Virus record (IMG/VR): IMGVR_UViG_3300047548_001236 | Location: 1-64,000 of that record | Direction: 5' to 3' (one strand) | DNA: 64,000 nucleotides | Part shown: piece by piece, positions 8,245 through 41,800 of the stretch | Layout: each line of letters opens with the position of its first letter | Numbering within the stretch: position 1 is the stretch's first letter | Notes under the pieces: generated by a model | What the model saw: the letters and a program-made list of their open reading frames with translations, nothing else | Databases searched by the model: none | What the model was told of the DNA's origin: nothing | Program-made: the position numbers and the translations under genes

Positions 8245-9036
8245 ATGTCTATTTATACACCTTATACCTATCTTATAGGATGGTCTTCAATAAGTAAATA
8301 TTATTATGGCGTCCGTTTTGCGAAAAACTGCCACCCAAGTGATTTGTGGGTGAAGTACTTCACCTCTTCCAAAACCGTAGCTGAATACCGTAAACTTTAC
8401 GGTGAGCCTGACGTGATTGAGGTTCGAAAAACATTCACAGATAAACACTCGGCAATTTTGTGGGAGGAGAGAGTGCTCCGAAAACTAGATATCAAGCACA
8501 ACGAAAAGATGCTTAATGCGAACGTTGCAGGCGCAATCGTGAAGAATCTTGATCACGCAAAAGGAAGACCGAGTAAACTCAGAGGCAGATATTGGACGGA
8601 GGAACAGAAAGCGAAGCTCAGAAAACCAAAATCAGTCCCTAGTCCGTTAAAGGGAAAACAATTGACAGATGAACATAAAGAGAAGCTCCGTGCTGCTAAA
8701 CGCGACTATAAACCGTGGAACGCTGGCAAAACTGGCCTACAGAGTCATTCGAGCGAAACAAAAGAAAAAATGCGGATGGCTAAGATCAAGTCAAAAGTCA
8801 TTATATTTTCAGAATGCCCTTGCTGTAAGGAAATAAAAGTTAAGCCAAATCAAACTTTCTGTAGCAATTCGTGTAGAGCGAAACACAACGCACAAAAATT
8901 ATCAGCTCAGGGAAAATTTGGATTTCAGAACAAGTCTAACCAAGATGCTGCGCAGTTAGCTAGAAGGCCCGTTGGGTTATACGGTGGAGCCCATACCGCA
9001 GACTCAATCAAGCAGCTAGGCGAACCTGTGGCTTGA
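8245..9036 (+). CDS. Homing endonuclease, GIY-YIG-like with NUMOD3 repeats
   Basis: YTYLIGW...YYYGVR, HSSETKEKMR repeats; late promoter TATAAATA at 8174-8181; antisense to its neighbours. Confidence 0.8.
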   Translation: MSIYTPYTYLIGWSSISKYYYGVRFAKNCHPSDLWVKYFTSSKTVAEYRKLYGEPDVIEVRKTFTDKHSAILWEERVLRKLDIKHNEKMLNANVAGAIVKNLDHAKGRPSKLRGRYWTEEQKAKLRKPKSVPSPLKGKQLTDEHKEKLRAAKRDYKPWNAGKTGLQSHSSETKEKMRMAKIKSKVIIFSECPCCKEIKVKPNQTFCSNSCRAKHNAQKLSAQGKFGFQNKSNQDAAQLARRPVGLYGGAHTADSIKQLGEPVA

Positions 9037-9336
9037 AATTATCGTTTGCAATGTTTGTTGCAGTTATTATTGTCTTCGCGGTAACGGCGCTTAGATCCCG
9101 GTAGCTCCATCCTGCCTAGTCCGCCTGTCGATCCTATTTCGAGCCCATCAAAGATACACTTGCTGATATCCTGTTAGATTTCAACTTGACCCACTACAGA
9201 TCAAAGTATCTAACACCGCTTCCGTTATCAGTCCGGTAGGTAGTTAACCTGTTTCCTTTGGCAAGTGTATCTATGGTGGACCCGCTGGGTACCGCCCCCA
9301 GGTCCAGAACGTGTTCAGTGAATATCATCACTACAA
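8962..9336 (-). ncRNA. ssrA: Circularly permuted (two-piece) tmRNA
   Basis: Acceptor piece ends GGGGGCGGTACCCAGCGGGTCCACCA (9274); intervening segment 9147-9273; coding piece starts GGGCTCGAAATAGGATCGAC (9146); tag ANDNFKPQVRLAA* (9008-9049); G3.U70 pair. Confidence 0.93.
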
Positions 9337-9339
9337 TTG

Positions 9340-9370
9340 TATTTATACTAGATCATGCTGAACAAGTCAA
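9340..9370 (-). promoter_or_regulatory. Overlapping sigma70-type (TTGACT-17-TATAAA) and T4 late (TATAAATA) promoter for tmRNA
   Basis: TTGACTTGTTCAGCATGATCTAGTATAAATA. Confidence 0.75.
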
Positions 9371-9500
9371 CCGCGATCGTATCTTCTTTGCTTTTCTTCG
9401 TAGGTGTCGTATCTTTCGGTCTCGCTTCCCATCAACTCCTCCTATGAAAAGAGGGGCTAACCATTGGCCCCTCACGAGTCTATTACGCGACCAGACGTAT

Positions 9501-18569: not shown

Positions 18570-18674
18570 TGGTATCCCAGACAGGATTCGAACCTGCACC
18601 TACGTCGACTGATAACCAGCGGTAGGCCCTAGCTTTTTATGGCCCCGGTGTTTACCCACTTCCACCACTAGGAT
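18570..18674 (-). tRNA. Degenerate Leu-like tRNA with enlarged variable arm
   Basis: Acceptor, D and T arms and CCA intact; anticodon stem poorly paired. Confidence 0.5.
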
Positions 18675-18680
18675 ATTTTT

Positions 18681-18757
18681 TGGAGGTCGACCATGGACTT
18701 GAACCACGACCCCAGCTCTTGCAAGAGCTGTACATTAACCAATTTTGCTAATCGACC
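18681..18757 (-). tRNA. tRNA-Cys-like with 8-nt anticodon loop
   Basis: CAGCT-CTTGCAAG-AGCTG; U73; CCA. Confidence 0.7.
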
Positions 18758-21237: not shown

Positions 21238-21313
21238 TGGCGGCCCTGGTGGGACTCGAACCCACGACCATGAGTTTTAGAGGCTCTAGCTCTACCATCT
21301 GAGCTACAAGGCC
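21238..21313 (-). tRNA. Amber suppressor tRNA (anticodon CUA)
   Basis: Loop CT-CTA-AA, canonical D/T arms, G73, CCA; two mismatches in anticodon stem. Confidence 0.8.
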
Positions 21314-23399: not shown

Positions 23400-24355
23400 T
23401 CTACTTGCAACGGGGAGTACGAGGGGATTTGCACCAGGCCCCTGAACCTTCTCCTCTTTTCAGCTCCTCAGGGAAGGAGCCTACTTCTGCACCTTGCTTA
23501 CTCCGCTCTGGAAGTAGAATATTGTTGCGGGTGAGATTACCCCGTATTGTGAGCGCCTTTCCGATGTACCACATCCCTTGCGAGGAGTGTTGTCGGGTTA
23601 TCCACAAGAGTCTTTCGATCATCTTGTATCGCTCAGTGCTGCCGTTTTTGAGGTCTGGCTGTTGACCTGTCGCATGTTACTACTCGTCCGTCTTTCCTAC
23701 GCCTGCCTTGCGAGCAGCTCAGAGGCGCTAACCTCCTACGTGATCATTCTGAACAACTACTCTAGCCTTGCGAGCCTTCGTAGGCCTGATTATCTTTCGA
23801 CTCAGGCATTAAGCACCTTTCGTAACACACCGGAGCAGACTTTCGCTTTTTGAATCTATGTTGCTTTGAACCAAAATCAAACGCTAATTTAATAGCTGCG
23901 AACCTACTGAGAAGTGCTGCTCCAGTTGCTCCACACCTTGTTAGATGCAGAATACCACACTCCTCCTGTCTTTCTCCTTGCGGGATACTCAACGTCACTT
24001 CACGAATCCGGTGTGACCCTTCCTCGTTGATGATCCTACACCGCCCTTCTACGCGAATAGTCGGACTATGTAGACACCTGTTGGACTTTTCCATTCGTTA
24101 GTTTGGCTGAAAACTGTTTGGGCGCCAACCCTCTTACACCTCACCGATCGGCTCTGGTGCTATCCTTTCGGACAGTCTTCCTAACTTACTGGATACCTCC
24201 TAGCTTCTAAGGCTAGAAGGGACTTGCTTTCGGTTTAATCCGAGTCAAGTCTATCCCAGGCTTGTATGAATGGACCATTTTACTGGCGCAGGTATGTAGG
24301 AATCCCTGCTTTGGGTGTGTTACCACACTTACCCTGACGACGTCATACCGCCATT
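23400..24355 (-). ncRNA. Candidate large structured ncRNA (about 950 nt)
   Basis: No credible ORF, many hairpins, downstream of a promoter and boxA within the tRNA island. Confidence 0.45.
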
Positions 24356-27947: not shown

Positions 27948-28078
27948 GTGTATTCTCCGTATGTTTTGTATATGTGCGTATATTTTTGTATGAACAATGT
28001 GTAGGCACGATGTAGTAATGCGTTCACAACACTATTTATACACGGTTACGCATACGATACAGCACCTACGAAGAAAAA

Positions 28079-28177
28079 TATCCTGGTTGGACTCGAACCA
28101 ACGGCCTGCGCTTTATTCCCAGCGTTTGGGTCCTTCACCATGAGGGAGCACTGCTCTACCGACTGAGCTACAGGATG
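28079..28177 (-). ncRNA. tRNA-like RNA with 34-nt anticodon loop, no CCA
   Basis: Canonical D and T arms; two hairpins in the anticodon loop. Confidence 0.6.
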
Positions 28178-28190
28178 TTTCGGAATTCGT

Positions 28191-31520: not shown

Positions 31521-31626
31521 TGGTGGTCTCAGCAGGATTCGAACCTGCACCGCGCCGGAAGCACATTCCGGTGTTCACCCGAGGTTTCACTCTGCAGCGC
31601 TACTACCCTCAACGAACTCCGAGACC
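31521..31626 (-). ncRNA. tRNA-like RNA with acceptor, T arm and CCA but aberrant body
   Basis: GGTCTCG/TGAGACC-A-CCA; GCAGGTTCGAATCCTGC. Confidence 0.6.
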
Positions 31627-31631
31627 ATAAT

Positions 31632-31712
31632 TGGTGCTGATGGAGGGACTCGAACCCTCAAAAACTCACTTTCTGAAAATGAGATGTCTACCTGAAATTG
31701 CATCACATCAGC
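31632..31712 (-). tRNA. tRNA-Leu(CAG), short variable region
   Basis: Loop TTCAGAA. Confidence 0.8.
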
Positions 31713-38924: not shown

Positions 38925-39018
38925 TGGAGCCCTGAATAGGATTCGAACCTACATTTGCCTTTTACAGCTCATTCCAGTTACCTTTCTCGACGTTCGTAGC
39001 GTCGGGGGATACCAGGGC
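38925..39018 (-). ncRNA. D-armless tRNA-like RNA with ACG anticodon arm and long variable region
   Basis: GCCCTGG-TATCCCC-CGACG(CTACGAA)CGTCG...T arm-CCA. Confidence 0.65.
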
Positions 39019-39068
39019 ATGTTATTTCAGCCGGAAATTCTTTAGTCGGACGCCGGATCGCCTCTGTT

Positions 39069-39422
39069 TGGTGGACTGTATCGGATTTGAACCGACATTG
39101 TAAGGTTATCTGACACCAGATGGTCGTTACCGACATGGATTTACACAGGCCCCACGGTTACCGTTGTTTACTAGTCAACAGCCCATTGGTGCCTAAGTCG
39201 TACATGCTAAAGTCAGCAAGACGAACATAGGACTTTATCTTGGTGGATCTGACGGGACTCGAACCCGCGTAACTCTGCCTTGTGTACCCCTAACGAATTA
39301 AGGTGGCAGTGTGATTCCTCACGTACACTAACAGACCCATAATTTGGTGGAACAGGGAAGTCGTGTAGTCGCTCCCAGGCGGCCCATATTGGCCCCGCAG
39401 TTATACACTCTGCGCATGCCCC
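39069..39422 (-). ncRNA. Three tRNA-like RNAs with G3.U70 Ala-type acceptors and aberrant bodies
   Basis: 39069-39184, 39241-39338, 39345-39422; each GGG.../...TCC-A-CCA. Confidence 0.65.
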
Positions 39423-39433
39423 ATAGTTAACTT

Positions 39434-39509
39434 TGGTGGAGCCTATCGGGATCGAACCGATGACCTTCTGAGTGCAAGTCAGACGCTCTCCCAACTGAGC
39501 TAAGGCCCC
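39434..39509 (-). tRNA. tRNA-Ala(UGC)
   Basis: Canonical. Confidence 0.95.
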
Positions 39510-39618
39510 AAATAGTATAAACAGGTTCGACCGCGGCACTCCATCGAAGCTCCCCTACTGCCTAAATCCGCGGTACTTCAAACGGCATGTTCAGGGCTCA
39601 GTTTCGCCTGTTTATTAT

Positions 39619-39699
39619 TGGTGGAGCCACCGAGGGTACGATCCCGGCTGATTTCCGCATTGCAAGTGCGGTGACCACCCCATAGCAGTCCCTGGCCCC
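39619..39699 (-). tRNA. tRNA-Ala(UGC), atypical
   Basis: Loop CTTGCAA; variant D/T arms. Confidence 0.7.
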
Positions 39700-39938
39700 G
39701 AATTCATTGGGTATTTCTGTTTTTAACGTGGCGCACACCCTACGTCCACATCATACTGGTTCTCACGTATCGAACCGAATGTCGTCTAGCATTACGACCC
39801 CTGCTTTGCTTGTTGCAGCGCCTAGGTAGCTAAATCAAACGAGTATAGACAGGGCTGTTTGCAGCTTTGACCATGAAGGAGACTATGCTCAGCGACATGG
39901 GACACCCTCACAAGGGGTGATTACATCACTATCTATTC

Positions 39939-40392: not shown

Positions 40393-40623
40393 TTACGCTA
40401 CTTGCGTTTCCGTGTCAACCACTTTTTTACGCTTTTGCTTCTTTTGTTTTTCCAGAAGCCGTTTGGCTTGCAGCCGATCTTGTGCTTCCTGATCTTCTTT
40501 TTGTGAGTGTGCCGTTCTCGCGAACTTTGCTACTTGGCGTCGAAGTCGTGCTGCGATGGATCGCTTCCAACGTTCAGCTCGCGAAGGTTTTTCGATGTGG
40601 ATATCTACTTCTTCATCAGTCAT
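40393..40623 (-). CDS. Basic hypothetical protein
   Basis: GGAG SD before MTDEEVD. Confidence 0.5.
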   Translation of the reverse strand: MTDEEVDIHIEKPSRAERWKRSIAARLRRQVAKFARTAHSQKEDQEAQDRLQAKRLLEKQKKQKRKKVVDTETQVA

Positions 40624-41674: not shown

Positions 41675-41800
41675 TGGCGACCCCGGTAGGACTCGAACCT
41701 ACAACCTACTGATTAGATCGTGCCTTAGAAGATTCGCACTTCACTGGGCTTCCATACCCTCAGGCCAAGTCAGTTGCTCTATCCATTGAGCTACGGAGTC
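41675..41800 (-). tRNA. tRNA-Arg(UCU) interrupted by a 50-nt insert in the anticodon
   Basis: Removing 41717-41766 restores a 76-nt cloverleaf with loop CTTCTAA. Confidence 0.85.

What the first reader, a model, noticed from the sequence alone, without database searches (positions are those of the whole stretch)
39069..39699. Cluster of G3.U70/A73 alanine-acceptor RNAs with non-tRNA bodies
Seen: beside two tRNA-Ala(UGC), three RNAs keep GGG.../...UCC-A-CCA acceptors with G3.U70. They have a 116-nt expanded body, a 25-nt anticodon loop with a UUCG hairpin, or a non-standard T arm. Known: AlaRS needs only G3.U70 and ignores the anticodon. Inference: chargeable tRNA mimics (EF-Tu/AlaRS decoys, alanine donors, or tmRNA-like TLDs).
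Basis: partly seen in the sequence, partly recalled or inferred. Interest (0 to 1): 0.7.

Follow-up and report, generated by a model that had tools for sequence, protein, structure and literature searches.

The report
Anticodon-less alanine tRNA mimics in phage
A giant freshwater phage carries, next to its two real alanine tRNA genes, three tRNA-shaped RNAs that keep the signals for processing and alanine charging but have no anticodon; at least two of them are conserved in related phages, so they are probably working RNAs, with an unknown job.

Summary
The window is the first 64 kb of a 283-kb T4-like jumbo phage with at least 51 tRNAs, a two-piece tmRNA and a GOLLD RNA. On the minus strand, 39069-39699 holds five ...UCC-A-CCA ends: two decoding tRNA-Ala(UGC) (D, E) and three non-decoding RNAs.

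- **A (116 nt):** a 56-nt branched arm replaces the anticodon arm.
- **B (98 nt):** a cloverleaf with a 25-nt "anticodon" loop holding a tetraloop hairpin.
- **C (78 nt):** an odd D arm and T arm.

Homologues came from metagenomic relatives. B has five members, 26 pairs, 100% paired, with six compensatory pairs. A has three full members plus extra contig variants and three compensatory pairs. C is conserved but shows no covariation. G1-C72, G2-C71, G3.U70, A73 and CCA are invariant in all B and C copies, and in further anticodon-less RNAs of related phages whose bodies differ. One A homologue has lost G3.U70 and CCA but keeps its body.

The best reading is tRNA mimics that are processed like tRNAs, can probably be charged by AlaRS, and cannot decode. 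Charging and function are untested. They are not tmRNA domains, not intron-bearing tRNAs, and (A, B) not decaying pseudogenes.

The parts
39069..39184 (-). A: 116-nt tRNA-shaped RNA. It has the acceptor GGGCUGU/ACAGUCC (G3.U70), A73-CCA, a canonical T arm, a small D-like hairpin, and a 56-nt branched arm with a GNRA hairpin in place of the anticodon arm.
   Evidence: Homologues are L106:1882-1996, L121:8959-9073 and L141:3452-3566. All 33 pairs are paired in the 3 sequences compared (window, L106, L121), with 3 compensatory pairs. Extra haplotypes in Logan contigs add a U.G intermediate. The internal GGCCUGU is ruled out as the 5' strand by L106.
39241..39338 (-). B: 98-nt cloverleaf with the acceptor GGGUCUG/CAGAUCC (G3.U70), A73-CCA, a 3-bp D stem, a 5-bp anticodon stem, a 25-nt loop with a tetraloop hairpin, and a canonical T arm.
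   Evidence: There are five members (window, L106, L126, L129, L132). The 26 pairs are 100% paired, 6 pairs are compensatory, and every helix is supported. The covariance model R1 scores the family at 67-123 bits and ordinary tRNAs at 40 or less.
39345..39422 (-). C: 78-nt RNA with a six-pair acceptor stem (G3.U70, G4.U69), A73-CCA, a D-like hairpin without GG, a GGCC/GGCC hairpin with a 6-7-nt loop, and a T-like arm with a 9-11-nt loop.
   Evidence: Homologues are L121:8824-8901 (96%) and L126:7392-7470 (89%), plus contigs in runs X3, X7 and X21. All substitutions are unpaired or keep the pair, but there is no compensatory change.
39434..39509 (-). D: canonical bacterial-type tRNA-Ala(UGC).
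   Evidence: ARAGORN; Rfam tRNA 69.7 bits.
39619..39699 (-). E: 81-nt tRNA-Ala(UGC) of a phage type, with a normal anticodon loop CUUGCAA, an enlarged D region and the T loop AUCGUAC.
   Evidence: ARAGORN. It is 95-100% identical in relatives. Homologues are annotated tRNA-Ala in T5-like Serratia and Klebsiella phages.
39185..39240 (-). Y: conserved small hairpin RNA module (AAGUCCUAUG...UAGGCACCA) between B and A.
   Evidence: It is present in L102, L099, L121, L126 and L130. Its ends resemble those of T4 rnaD.
39510..39618 (-). S: conserved structured RNA of about 109 nt between E and D.
   Evidence: seven sequences; the closing stem has 5 of 7 pairs with compensatory changes. No Rfam match.
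39020..39068 (-). Anchor: a highly conserved 41-49-nt motif just after A.
   Evidence: It is 93-95% identical in most relatives (85% in L121). It was used to fetch related loci.
38925..39018 (-). F: tRNA-like RNA with no D arm, the invariant anticodon loop CUACGAA (Arg ACG), and U73-CCA.
   Evidence: Of its 17 pairs, 9 are compensatory. It has a homologue in Xanthomonas phage X1.

Best explanation
A and B, and probably C, are genuine phage RNAs that have the shape of tRNA-Ala but cannot decode.

**Shown here.**
- They lie inside a long run of same-strand tRNA genes, with no promoter- or terminator-like site on that strand within the cluster itself.
- Each has a 7-bp (C: 6-bp) acceptor stem carrying G1-C72, G2-C71, G3.U70 and A73, plus an encoded CCA.
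- A and B have a standard T arm.
- None has a 7-nt anticodon loop or an alanine anticodon.
- The folds of A and B are kept by compensatory changes in related phages.

**Inferred from established knowledge.**
- They are cut out of the tRNA precursor by RNase P and 3' trimming, like their neighbours.
- Host AlaRS, which reads the acceptor stem and not the anticodon, charges them with alanine.
- Without an anticodon they cannot act as adaptors on the ribosome.

**Inferred with low certainty.** They work by competition. Each offers an alanine-type acceptor/T-arm domain joined to a body of its own, and so acts as a decoy or bait for a host factor that handles tRNA ends, in the conflict over tRNAs between phage and host. 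Their cassette-like gain and loss among close relatives fits such an accessory role.
For: **Observation.**

**Context.** The genome is a 283-kb T4-like phage with 51 ARAGORN tRNAs. The scan found no minus-strand promoter- or terminator-like site between 38000 and 40600.

**B.** Five members; all 124 cells are paired; there are 6 compensatory pairs; 0 of 500 shuffles reach the covariation score.

**A.** 33 pairs, all paired, 3 compensatory. Contig variants follow the path C-G to U.G to U-A.

**Invariant G3.U70.** It is kept while neighbouring pairs change:
- B pair 7-66 goes from G-C to A-U, and pair 5-68 to U.G.
- C pair G4.U69 goes to G-C.

**Other anticodon-less RNAs with the same GGG/UCC-A-CCA**:
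- L098:6762-6837, with a GNRA-capped arm.
- L111:12358-12435, with a 5-nt loop.
- L126:11784-11889.

**Variable loop.** The B loop varies from 25 nt with a UUCG, CUCG, CUUG or AUUA hairpin to a 10-nt loop (L132), and it never holds an Ala anticodon.

**Processing signals.** U at -1 in A, B, C and D, and an encoded CCA.

**Alanine identity set.** PMC9976931.

**Module gain and loss.** L126 lacks A and L121 lacks B; joints in Logan contigs show further variants.
Against: - No aminoacylation, processing or expression data exist. An RNA library (X16) holds contigs over the region, but DNA carry-over is not excluded.
- L141:3452-3566 keeps the A body at 90% identity but has G3-C70, G1.U72 and ACA in place of CCA. 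In that lineage the RNA cannot be an AlaRS substrate.
- A and B lack the minor determinant G4-C69.
- C shows no covariation and has no standard T loop or D loop.
- The phage also has tRNA-like RNAs with enlarged loops and non-alanine acceptors, so odd tRNA bodies are not specific to alanine.
- No partner protein was identified.
Confidence: 0.5

Rival explanations
1. Natural tRNA scaffold. The working part is the inserted arm (the branched arm of A, the loop hairpin of B). The tRNA frame only secures RNase P processing and stability, and alanylation is incidental or unnecessary.
For: - The L141 homologue keeps the A body and T arm while losing G3.U70 and CCA.
- The bodies are conserved with compensatory changes.
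- Other tRNA-like RNAs in the genome carry insertions on non-alanine frames.
- T4 rnaC is a stable RNA with a T arm and no alanine acceptor.
Against: - The B insert is the least conserved part: the hairpin sequence and loop change, it is absent in L132, and it is replaced by a tetraloop in L098:6762-6837.
- By contrast, GGG/UCC-A-CCA is invariant across families with unrelated bodies.
- A wobble pair is one mutation away from a Watson-Crick pair, so keeping it needs selection.
Confidence: 0.27
2. Decaying duplicates. Tandem duplication of tRNA-Ala, perhaps driven by the homing endonucleases of the array, left copies whose anticodon arms have degenerated.
For: - Five alanine-type ends lie in 631 nt.
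- Homing endonuclease genes are spread through the array.
- Modules are present or absent among close relatives.
- C has no covariation and irregular arms.
- L141 has lost the acceptor signals.
Against: - B at 81% identity (L129) and at 67% (L132) still has every one of its 26 pairs intact, with 6 compensatory pairs.
- A has 3 compensatory pairs and no broken pair.
- All 9 substitutions of C in L126 fall in unpaired positions or keep pairing.
Confidence: 0.08
3. tmRNA tRNA-like domains without a message, like the domain-only tmRNA of mycobacteriophage DS6A. They would bind SmpB and interfere with host trans-translation.
For: - The Rfam tmRNA model aligns the acceptor and T arm of B (31.5 bits).
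- The 3' part of B resembles the tmRNA acceptor piece of Xanthomonas phage X1.
- The precedent, and the SmpB-titration idea, are described in PMC4131195.
Against: - The score is below the Rfam threshold of 47, and only generic acceptor and T-arm columns align.
- B has a covarying D stem and anticodon stem in the space SmpB would occupy.
- The T arm of the phage's own tmRNA is different.
- The phage encodes its own tmRNA and no SmpB, so titrating SmpB would also hit its own tmRNA.
Confidence: 0.07
4. Interrupted tRNA genes. The extra loop sequence is an intron or insertion that is removed to give a decoding tRNA.
For: - ARAGORN in intron mode calls B a tRNA-Val(CAC) with an 18-nt intron.
- A clear tRNA-Arg(UCU) with a 50-nt insertion after U34 exists at 41675-41800.
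Against: - No alanine anticodon is left in any B member.
- The ARAGORN 'intron' sits 5' of the anticodon and would leave C33.
- Loop length ranges over 4, 5, 10 and 25 nt among relatives.
- A has a 56-nt branched arm with no loop to restore.
- No known bacterial or phage mechanism removes such short inserts.
Confidence: 0.03
5. Alanine donors for a non-ribosomal aminoacyl transfer, to cell-wall precursors, lipids or proteins.
For: An alanine acceptor combined with an inability to decode is the design expected of a dedicated donor. This follows from established knowledge of Fem-type and aminoacyl-phosphatidylglycerol enzymes, which accept acceptor-stem substrates.
Against: No FemAB or aminoacyl-phosphatidylglycerol synthase domain was found in the phage. 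Only these two families were checked, and a host enzyme is not excluded.
Confidence: 0.05

Closest known systems
tRNA-Ala and the alanine minihelix substrates of AlaRS
   Same: G1-C72, G2-C71, G3.U70, A73 and CCA sit on a 7-bp acceptor stem stacked on a standard T arm (A, B). This is the part that AlaRS and RNase P read.
   Different: There is no 7-nt anticodon loop and no NGC anticodon. A and B lack G4-C69. The D regions are atypical. C lacks standard D and T loops.
tmRNA tRNA-like domain, including the domain-only tmRNA of mycobacteriophage DS6A (PMC4131195)
   Same: A phage-encoded RNA with an alanine-type acceptor and no anticodon. It gives a weak Rfam tmRNA match over the acceptor and T arm.
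   Different: B keeps a D stem and a 5-bp anticodon stem. There is no P2 helix, no tag frame and no SmpB site features. It scores below the Rfam threshold.
T4 stable RNAs rnaC (species 1) and rnaD (species 2) in the T4 tRNA cluster
   Same: These are small stable RNAs of unknown function encoded among the tRNA genes of a T4-type phage. rnaC has a standard T arm near its 3' end and an enlarged body.
   Different: No sequence similarity was found. rnaC has no G3.U70 acceptor and no encoded CCA. The Y module, rather than A, B or C, resembles the ends of rnaD.
Engineered tRNA scaffolds (an RNA of interest grafted in place of the anticodon arm); named from my own knowledge
   Same: The architecture is the same: an intact acceptor, D and T frame with a foreign arm at the anticodon position.
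   Different: These are natural, conserved RNAs, always on an alanine frame in these families.
YrlA / bacterial Y RNA with a tRNA-like module
   Same: A tRNA-like module inside a non-coding RNA, also reported in phages.
   Different: The ends of a Y RNA form the Ro-binding stem, not an acceptor with CCA. No TROVE/Ro gene is present in this phage.

Membership tests
Decoding tRNA-Ala | A 7-nt anticodon loop with an NGC anticodon | tested here: not met
   - A has no such loop.
- The B loop is 25 nt (10 nt in L132).
- The C loop is 6-7 nt without U33 or NGC.
- D and E meet this feature.
Decoding tRNA-Ala | Reaches the Rfam RF00005 gathering score (29 bits) | tested here: not met
   A, B and C are absent from the gathering-threshold list and from the E<=10 list as tRNA.
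Bacterial AlaRS substrate | G3.U70, A73 and G2-C71 | tested here: met
   These are present in A, B and C, and invariant in all B and C homologues and in most A homologues. The exception is L141. The identity set is from PMC9976931.
Bacterial AlaRS substrate | Minor determinant G4-C69 | tested here: not met
   - A has C4-G69.
- B has U4-A69.
- C has G4.U69, which is G-C in L126.
Bacterial AlaRS substrate | Actual alanylation | not testable with these tools
   The complex-prediction job was not folded and gives no evidence.
RNase P / tRNA-processing substrate | Acceptor stem stacked on a T arm with a UUCRA loop, plus a 3' NCCA | tested here: met
   A has the T loop UUCAAAU and B has UUCGAGU; both have 5-bp T stems and an encoded ACCA, with U at -1. 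C is not met for the T loop. Cleavage itself was not tested.
tmRNA tRNA-like domain | Rfam tmRNA gathering score (47 bits) | tested here: not met
   B scores 31.5 bits, aligning only the acceptor and T arm, with model positions 26-337 skipped. A and C give no tmRNA hit.
tmRNA tRNA-like domain | No D stem or anticodon stem (the space taken by SmpB); P2 helix; tag reading frame | tested here: not met
   The B D stem and anticodon stem covary. The candidate long-range helix GUGUAC/GUACAC is broken in L126 and L129. A short frame in A is not conserved in L106.
T4 rnaC-type stable RNA | Sequence or profile similarity to T4 rnaC | tested here: inconclusive
   Model R1 hits the T4 rnaC region at 24 bits, the level of any T-arm-bearing RNA. 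Only the location and the T arm are shared.
YrlA / Y RNA | A partner Ro/TROVE protein, and termini forming the Ro-binding stem | tested here: not met
   There is no TROVE domain in the phage. The termini form an acceptor stem with CCA.

The most novel reading that the evidence does not exclude
T4-like jumbo phages of fresh water maintain several families of alanine-charged RNAs that never enter translation. Alanine is the chosen frame because AlaRS is among the few synthetases that ignore the anticodon. The charged or chargeable end is needed for their action, for example as bait for host toxins that attack tRNA 3' ends or aminoacyl-tRNA, or as partners or cargo of the co-encoded GOLLD RNA cage. 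This would be a new class of phage counter-defence or translation-control RNA.
Probability: 0.25. Interest if true: 0.85.

Novelty: new variant of a known kind. Interest (0 to 1): 0.62.

Why it matters
Phage tRNA arrays are now seen as weapons against host defences that cut or block tRNAs. The array elements that gene finders skip or label "pseudo" have not been studied. Here at least two such elements are shown by comparative evidence to be conserved, structured RNAs. They keep exactly the part of tRNA-Ala that is read by RNase P, the CCA machinery, AlaRS and EF-Tu, and they discard the part read by the ribosome. If they are charged, they are natural alanyl-RNAs outside translation. If not, they are natural tRNA scaffolds. 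Either way they give testable entry points to a long-open question, the function of the stable RNAs found in T4-type tRNA clusters. They also show that annotation pipelines miss a recurrent RNA class.

Tried and rejected
- **GenBank phage searches:** only E (T5-like phage tRNA-Ala) and the 3' part of B (X1 and BUDD tmRNA) matched.
- **Protein-anchored IMG/VR searches:** the 161-aa and 626-aa neighbours gave loci without tRNAs, or nothing.
- **Exact patterns of A and B in IMG/VR:** no hits.
- **Anchor motif in bacterial genomes:** one chance hit inside a coding gene of a CPR bin.
- **Alternative fold of B:** a three-way junction or pseudoknot with GUGUAC/GUACAC was favoured with two sequences. 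It was rejected once L126 and L129 were added.
- **Alternative 5' strand for A:** the internal GGCCUGU was rejected by L106.
- **Second two-piece tmRNA built from the 3' part of B plus A:** rejected. The Rfam hit is 18.7 bits, and L126 lacks A while L121 lacks B.
- **Phage partners:** no TROVE, SmpB, AlaRS, FemAB or aminoacyl-PG synthase was found.
- **RNA-library contigs:** they cover the region but do not prove transcription or define ends.

Full report
**1. Context**

The window is bases 1-64000 of a single 282,855-bp virus record. It encodes T4-type topoisomerase II subunits and many homing endonucleases. The best GenBank relatives of the topoisomerase are KVP40-like Vibrio phages, at only 50% identity. 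ARAGORN finds 38 tRNA genes in the window and 51 in the genome, all on the minus strand. Rfam adds a GOLLD RNA (23528-23965) and a two-piece tmRNA (8962-9374). The finding therefore lies inside the tRNA array of an uncultured T4-like jumbo phage. Its sequence recurs in freshwater, sediment and wastewater metagenomes.

**2. The observation**

Read on the minus strand, 39699-39069 holds five ends of the form UCC-A-CCA. The heptamer TCCACCA occurs 12 times in the window on both strands, against 7.8 expected. Five on one strand within 557 nt is therefore far beyond chance.

- **D (39509-39434)** is a canonical tRNA-Ala(UGC), at 69.7 bits against the Rfam tRNA model.
- **E (39699-39619)** is an 81-nt tRNA-Ala(UGC) with a normal anticodon stem-loop, an enlarged D region and the T loop AUCGUAC. 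Homologues of E are annotated tRNA-Ala in T5-like Serratia and Klebsiella phages.
None reaches the Rfam tRNA threshold.
- A, B, C and D have U at position -1, and all five encode CCA.
- The consensus scan found no minus-strand promoter- or terminator-like site inside the cluster.

**3. Finding relatives**

GenBank phages gave nothing for A-C beyond generic T-arm similarity. Relatives came from four routes:

- topoisomerase-anchored IMG/VR contigs, followed by a whole-record BLAST;
- a 41-nt motif just downstream of A that is 95% conserved;
- contigs encoding homologues of the small protein at 40396-40623;
- Logan contigs of other metagenomes laid on the region.

**4. B is a conserved cloverleaf without an anticodon**

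The five members are the window, L106:2103-2201, L126:7477-7574, L129:2826-2925 and L132:2067-2150. Blastn identity to the window copy is 90%, 81% and 67% for L126, L129 and L132.

- On the cloverleaf (7-bp acceptor, 3-bp D stem, 5-bp anticodon stem, 6-bp loop hairpin, 5-bp T stem), all 124 cells are standard pairs.
- Six pairs show changes on both sides, at least one in every helix.
- No shuffle of 500 reaches the covariation score, and slid controls drop to 31-48% paired.
- With only two sequences RNAalifold preferred a long-range helix, GUGUAC/GUACAC. L126 (GCAUAC / AUACAC) and L129 break it, and the four-sequence consensus is the cloverleaf.
- The "anticodon" loop is the variable part. It is 25-26 nt with a hairpin capped by UUCG, AUUA, CUCG or CUUG, or a plain 10-nt loop in L132. 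No member has an NGC anticodon in a 7-nt loop.
- A covariance model of the family scores its members at 67-123 bits and all ordinary tRNAs at 40 bits or less.

**5. A is a tRNA frame with a long branched arm**

- With L106:1882-1996 and L121:8959-9073, the consensus has the acceptor stem, a small hairpin at the D position, a 56-nt arm (outer helix GUGGGG/CCUUAC, inner GNRA hairpin), a 3-nt connector and a standard T arm.
- All 33 pairs are paired in all three sequences, and three pairs are compensatory.
- Contigs from runs X3, X7 and X16 add haplotypes with the same T-stem swaps, a U.G intermediate at pair 53-60, and the T-loop variants UUCGAAU and UUCAAGU.
- With three sequences the shuffle control is weak (32 of 500), so the support is moderate.
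- A second possible 5' strand inside A (GGCCUGU) is excluded, because L106 reads GGCCUAU while the 3' strand is unchanged.

**6. C is conserved but not proven**

C recurs in L121 (96%) and L126 (89%), and in contigs of X3, X7 and X21. All nine substitutions in L126 fall in unpaired positions or keep or improve a pair (G4.U69 to G-C, C5-G68 to U.G). There is no double change. Its D-like and T-like loops lack the GG and UUC motifs, so a normal tRNA elbow is doubtful. C could be a working RNA or a young degenerate copy.

**7. The alanine signals**

The bacterial alanine identity set is A73, G2-C71, G3.U70, G4-C69 and G20, with G3.U70 dominant. Changing it to G-C abolishes charging (PMC9976931).

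- G1-C72, G2-C71, G3.U70, A73 and CCA are invariant in all B and C copies and in the A copies of the window, L106 and L121. Neighbouring acceptor pairs change meanwhile.
- The same GGG/UCC-A-CCA end is found on other anticodon-less RNAs in related phages, with different stems 4-7 and different bodies:
  - L098:6762-6837, whose anticodon arm is a bulged 7-bp stem closed by GGAA;
  - L111:12358-12435, with a 5-nt loop;
  - L126:11784-11889, 106 nt.
- A wobble pair is one mutation from a Watson-Crick pair, so its retention across diverged families argues for selection on alanine identity.
- Two limits apply. A and B lack the minor determinant G4-C69. One A homologue, L141:3452-3566, is 90% identical with its body and T arm intact, but ends ACAGCCU-A-ACA. 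That gives G3-C70, G1.U72 (an antideterminant for E. coli AlaRS according to PMC9976931) and no CCA. In that lineage the RNA is either decaying or works without alanine.

**8. What they are not**

- **Not tmRNA domains.** B gives 31.5 bits against the Rfam tmRNA model (threshold 47), using only generic acceptor and T-arm columns. It has covarying D and anticodon stems. The T arm of the phage's own tmRNA differs. The phage has no SmpB. The precedent of a domain-only tmRNA in mycobacteriophage DS6A, and the idea that such RNAs titrate SmpB, come from PMC4131195.
- **Not intron-bearing tRNAs.** No alanine anticodon remains, and loop sizes vary from 4 to 25 nt. A true tRNA-Arg(UCU) with a 50-nt insertion does exist at 41675-41800.
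- **Not Y RNAs.** There is no TROVE gene, and the termini form an acceptor stem.
- **A and B are not decaying pseudogenes** (sections 4 and 5).

**9. Wider pattern**

- The phage has at least eight RNAs with a standard T arm, a perfect 7-bp acceptor and NCCA that ARAGORN does not call. Several of them have non-alanine acceptors and enlarged loops. Odd tRNA bodies are therefore a general habit of this clade, and alanine frames are the largest group among the anticodon-less ones.
- The cluster is modular. The window reads X-W-E-S-D-C-B-Y-A-anchor-F. L126 lacks A, and L121 lacks B. Some contigs join D directly to A, or C to A.
- The non-tRNA modules are themselves conserved RNAs. The closing stem of S covaries, and F has 9 of 17 compensatory pairs.
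- T4 itself carries two stable RNAs of unknown function in its tRNA cluster. rnaC has a standard T arm and an enlarged body. rnaD ends in GCACCA, as module Y does.

**10. Mechanism**

- **Shown:** conserved tRNA-like folds; alanine acceptor signals; processing signals; no anticodon; placement in a tRNA transcription unit.
- **Inferred from established enzymology:** maturation by RNase P and 3' trimming; alanylation by host AlaRS; inability to decode.
- **Inferred weakly:** action by competition or baiting in the conflict over tRNAs.
- **Partners:** the phage has a CCA-adding enzyme, and relatives encode RlaP next to the array. No AlaRS, Fem-type or aminoacyl-lipid enzyme was found.
- **Main rival:** the tRNA frame is only a scaffold for the inserted arm. 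L141 speaks for this rival. The variability of the B insert, set against the invariance of the acceptor, speaks against it.
- **Expression:** an environmental RNA library holds contigs over the F-A, D-S-E, X and W parts of the region and none over several neighbouring ORF stretches. DNA carry-over and gene-content differences are not excluded.

**11. Verdict**

A and B are functional-looking RNA families, and C is uncertain. The tmRNA option is not supported. I found no prior description in the searched literature. I therefore rate this a new variant of a known kind (tRNA mimics and phage stable RNAs), of moderate to high interest.

Noticed in passing
window 38925-39018 (-); L106:1753-1834; L098:2840-2921; L001:2765-2858: F is a conserved tRNA-like RNA with the invariant anticodon loop CUACGAA (Arg ACG). 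It has a 7-nt linker in place of the D arm and a conserved GGUAACUGGA after the anticodon stem. Of its 17 pairs, 9 are compensatory, and it is also present in Xanthomonas phage X1. It may be a tRNA-Arg that lacks a D arm.
   Followed up: partly
window 39510-39618 (-): S is a structured RNA of about 109 nt between the two tRNA-Ala genes. It has a strongly conserved core and a covarying closing stem across seven relatives. It has no Rfam family.
   Followed up: partly
window 39756-39938 (-): Modules X (a closing stem AUAGA../..UCUAU) and W (ending in the hairpin GGUUCGAUACGUGAGAACC) are conserved in many related contigs. X always follows a tRNA or tRNA-like CCA end, and W always precedes the E-type tRNA-Ala.
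   Followed up: partly
window 39020-39068 (-): A 41-49-nt motif (core GACUAAAGAAUUUCCGGCUG) is 93-95% identical in most relatives (85% in L121). That is more conserved than the neighbouring tRNAs. Its role is unknown.
   Followed up: partly
window 39185-39240 (-); L118:1554-1672: Module Y (AAGUCCUAUG...UAGGCACCA) shares its end motifs (AAGUC... and ...GCACCA) with the T4 species 2 RNA (rnaD). It may be a homologue.
   Followed up: no
window 41675-41800 (-): An otherwise canonical tRNA-Arg(UCU), at 58.5 bits against the Rfam tRNA model, is interrupted by a 50-nt insertion right after U34. The related contig G005 has the same tRNA uninterrupted.
   Followed up: partly
window 28075-28178, 31632-31712, 18570-18674, 18681-18757, 31521-31626 (-): Further tRNA-like RNAs have anticodon loops of 34, 9, 12 and 8 nt, or an irregular 106-nt body. 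One of them (28075-28178) has no CCA.
   Followed up: partly
window 21238-21313 (-): A tRNA with the anticodon CUA (an amber suppressor type) is also present in the related contig L098:592-667.
   Followed up: no
window 23528-23965 (-) and 8962-9374 (-): A GOLLD RNA (194.9 bits) and a two-piece (permuted) tmRNA lie in the same array. The phage has no SmpB gene.
   Followed up: partly
window 39441-39487, seen in run X3: In a related phage the canonical tRNA-Ala gene D carries 472 other letters between these two positions. This is either an insertion or a replacement.
   Followed up: no
window 39619-39699 (-); L098:6328-6403: The E-type tRNA-Ala has the T loop AUCGUAC (AUCGUUA in G005). Positions 54 and 58 read A and U instead of U and A, while T5-like phage homologues have UUCGAAU.
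   Followed up: no
L138:7868-7967; L009:20862-20961: A 100-nt element in the G005 lineage has a GGGGGUA/UACCUCC-A-CCA end (G3.U70) but no T arm next to the acceptor strand.
   Followed up: no
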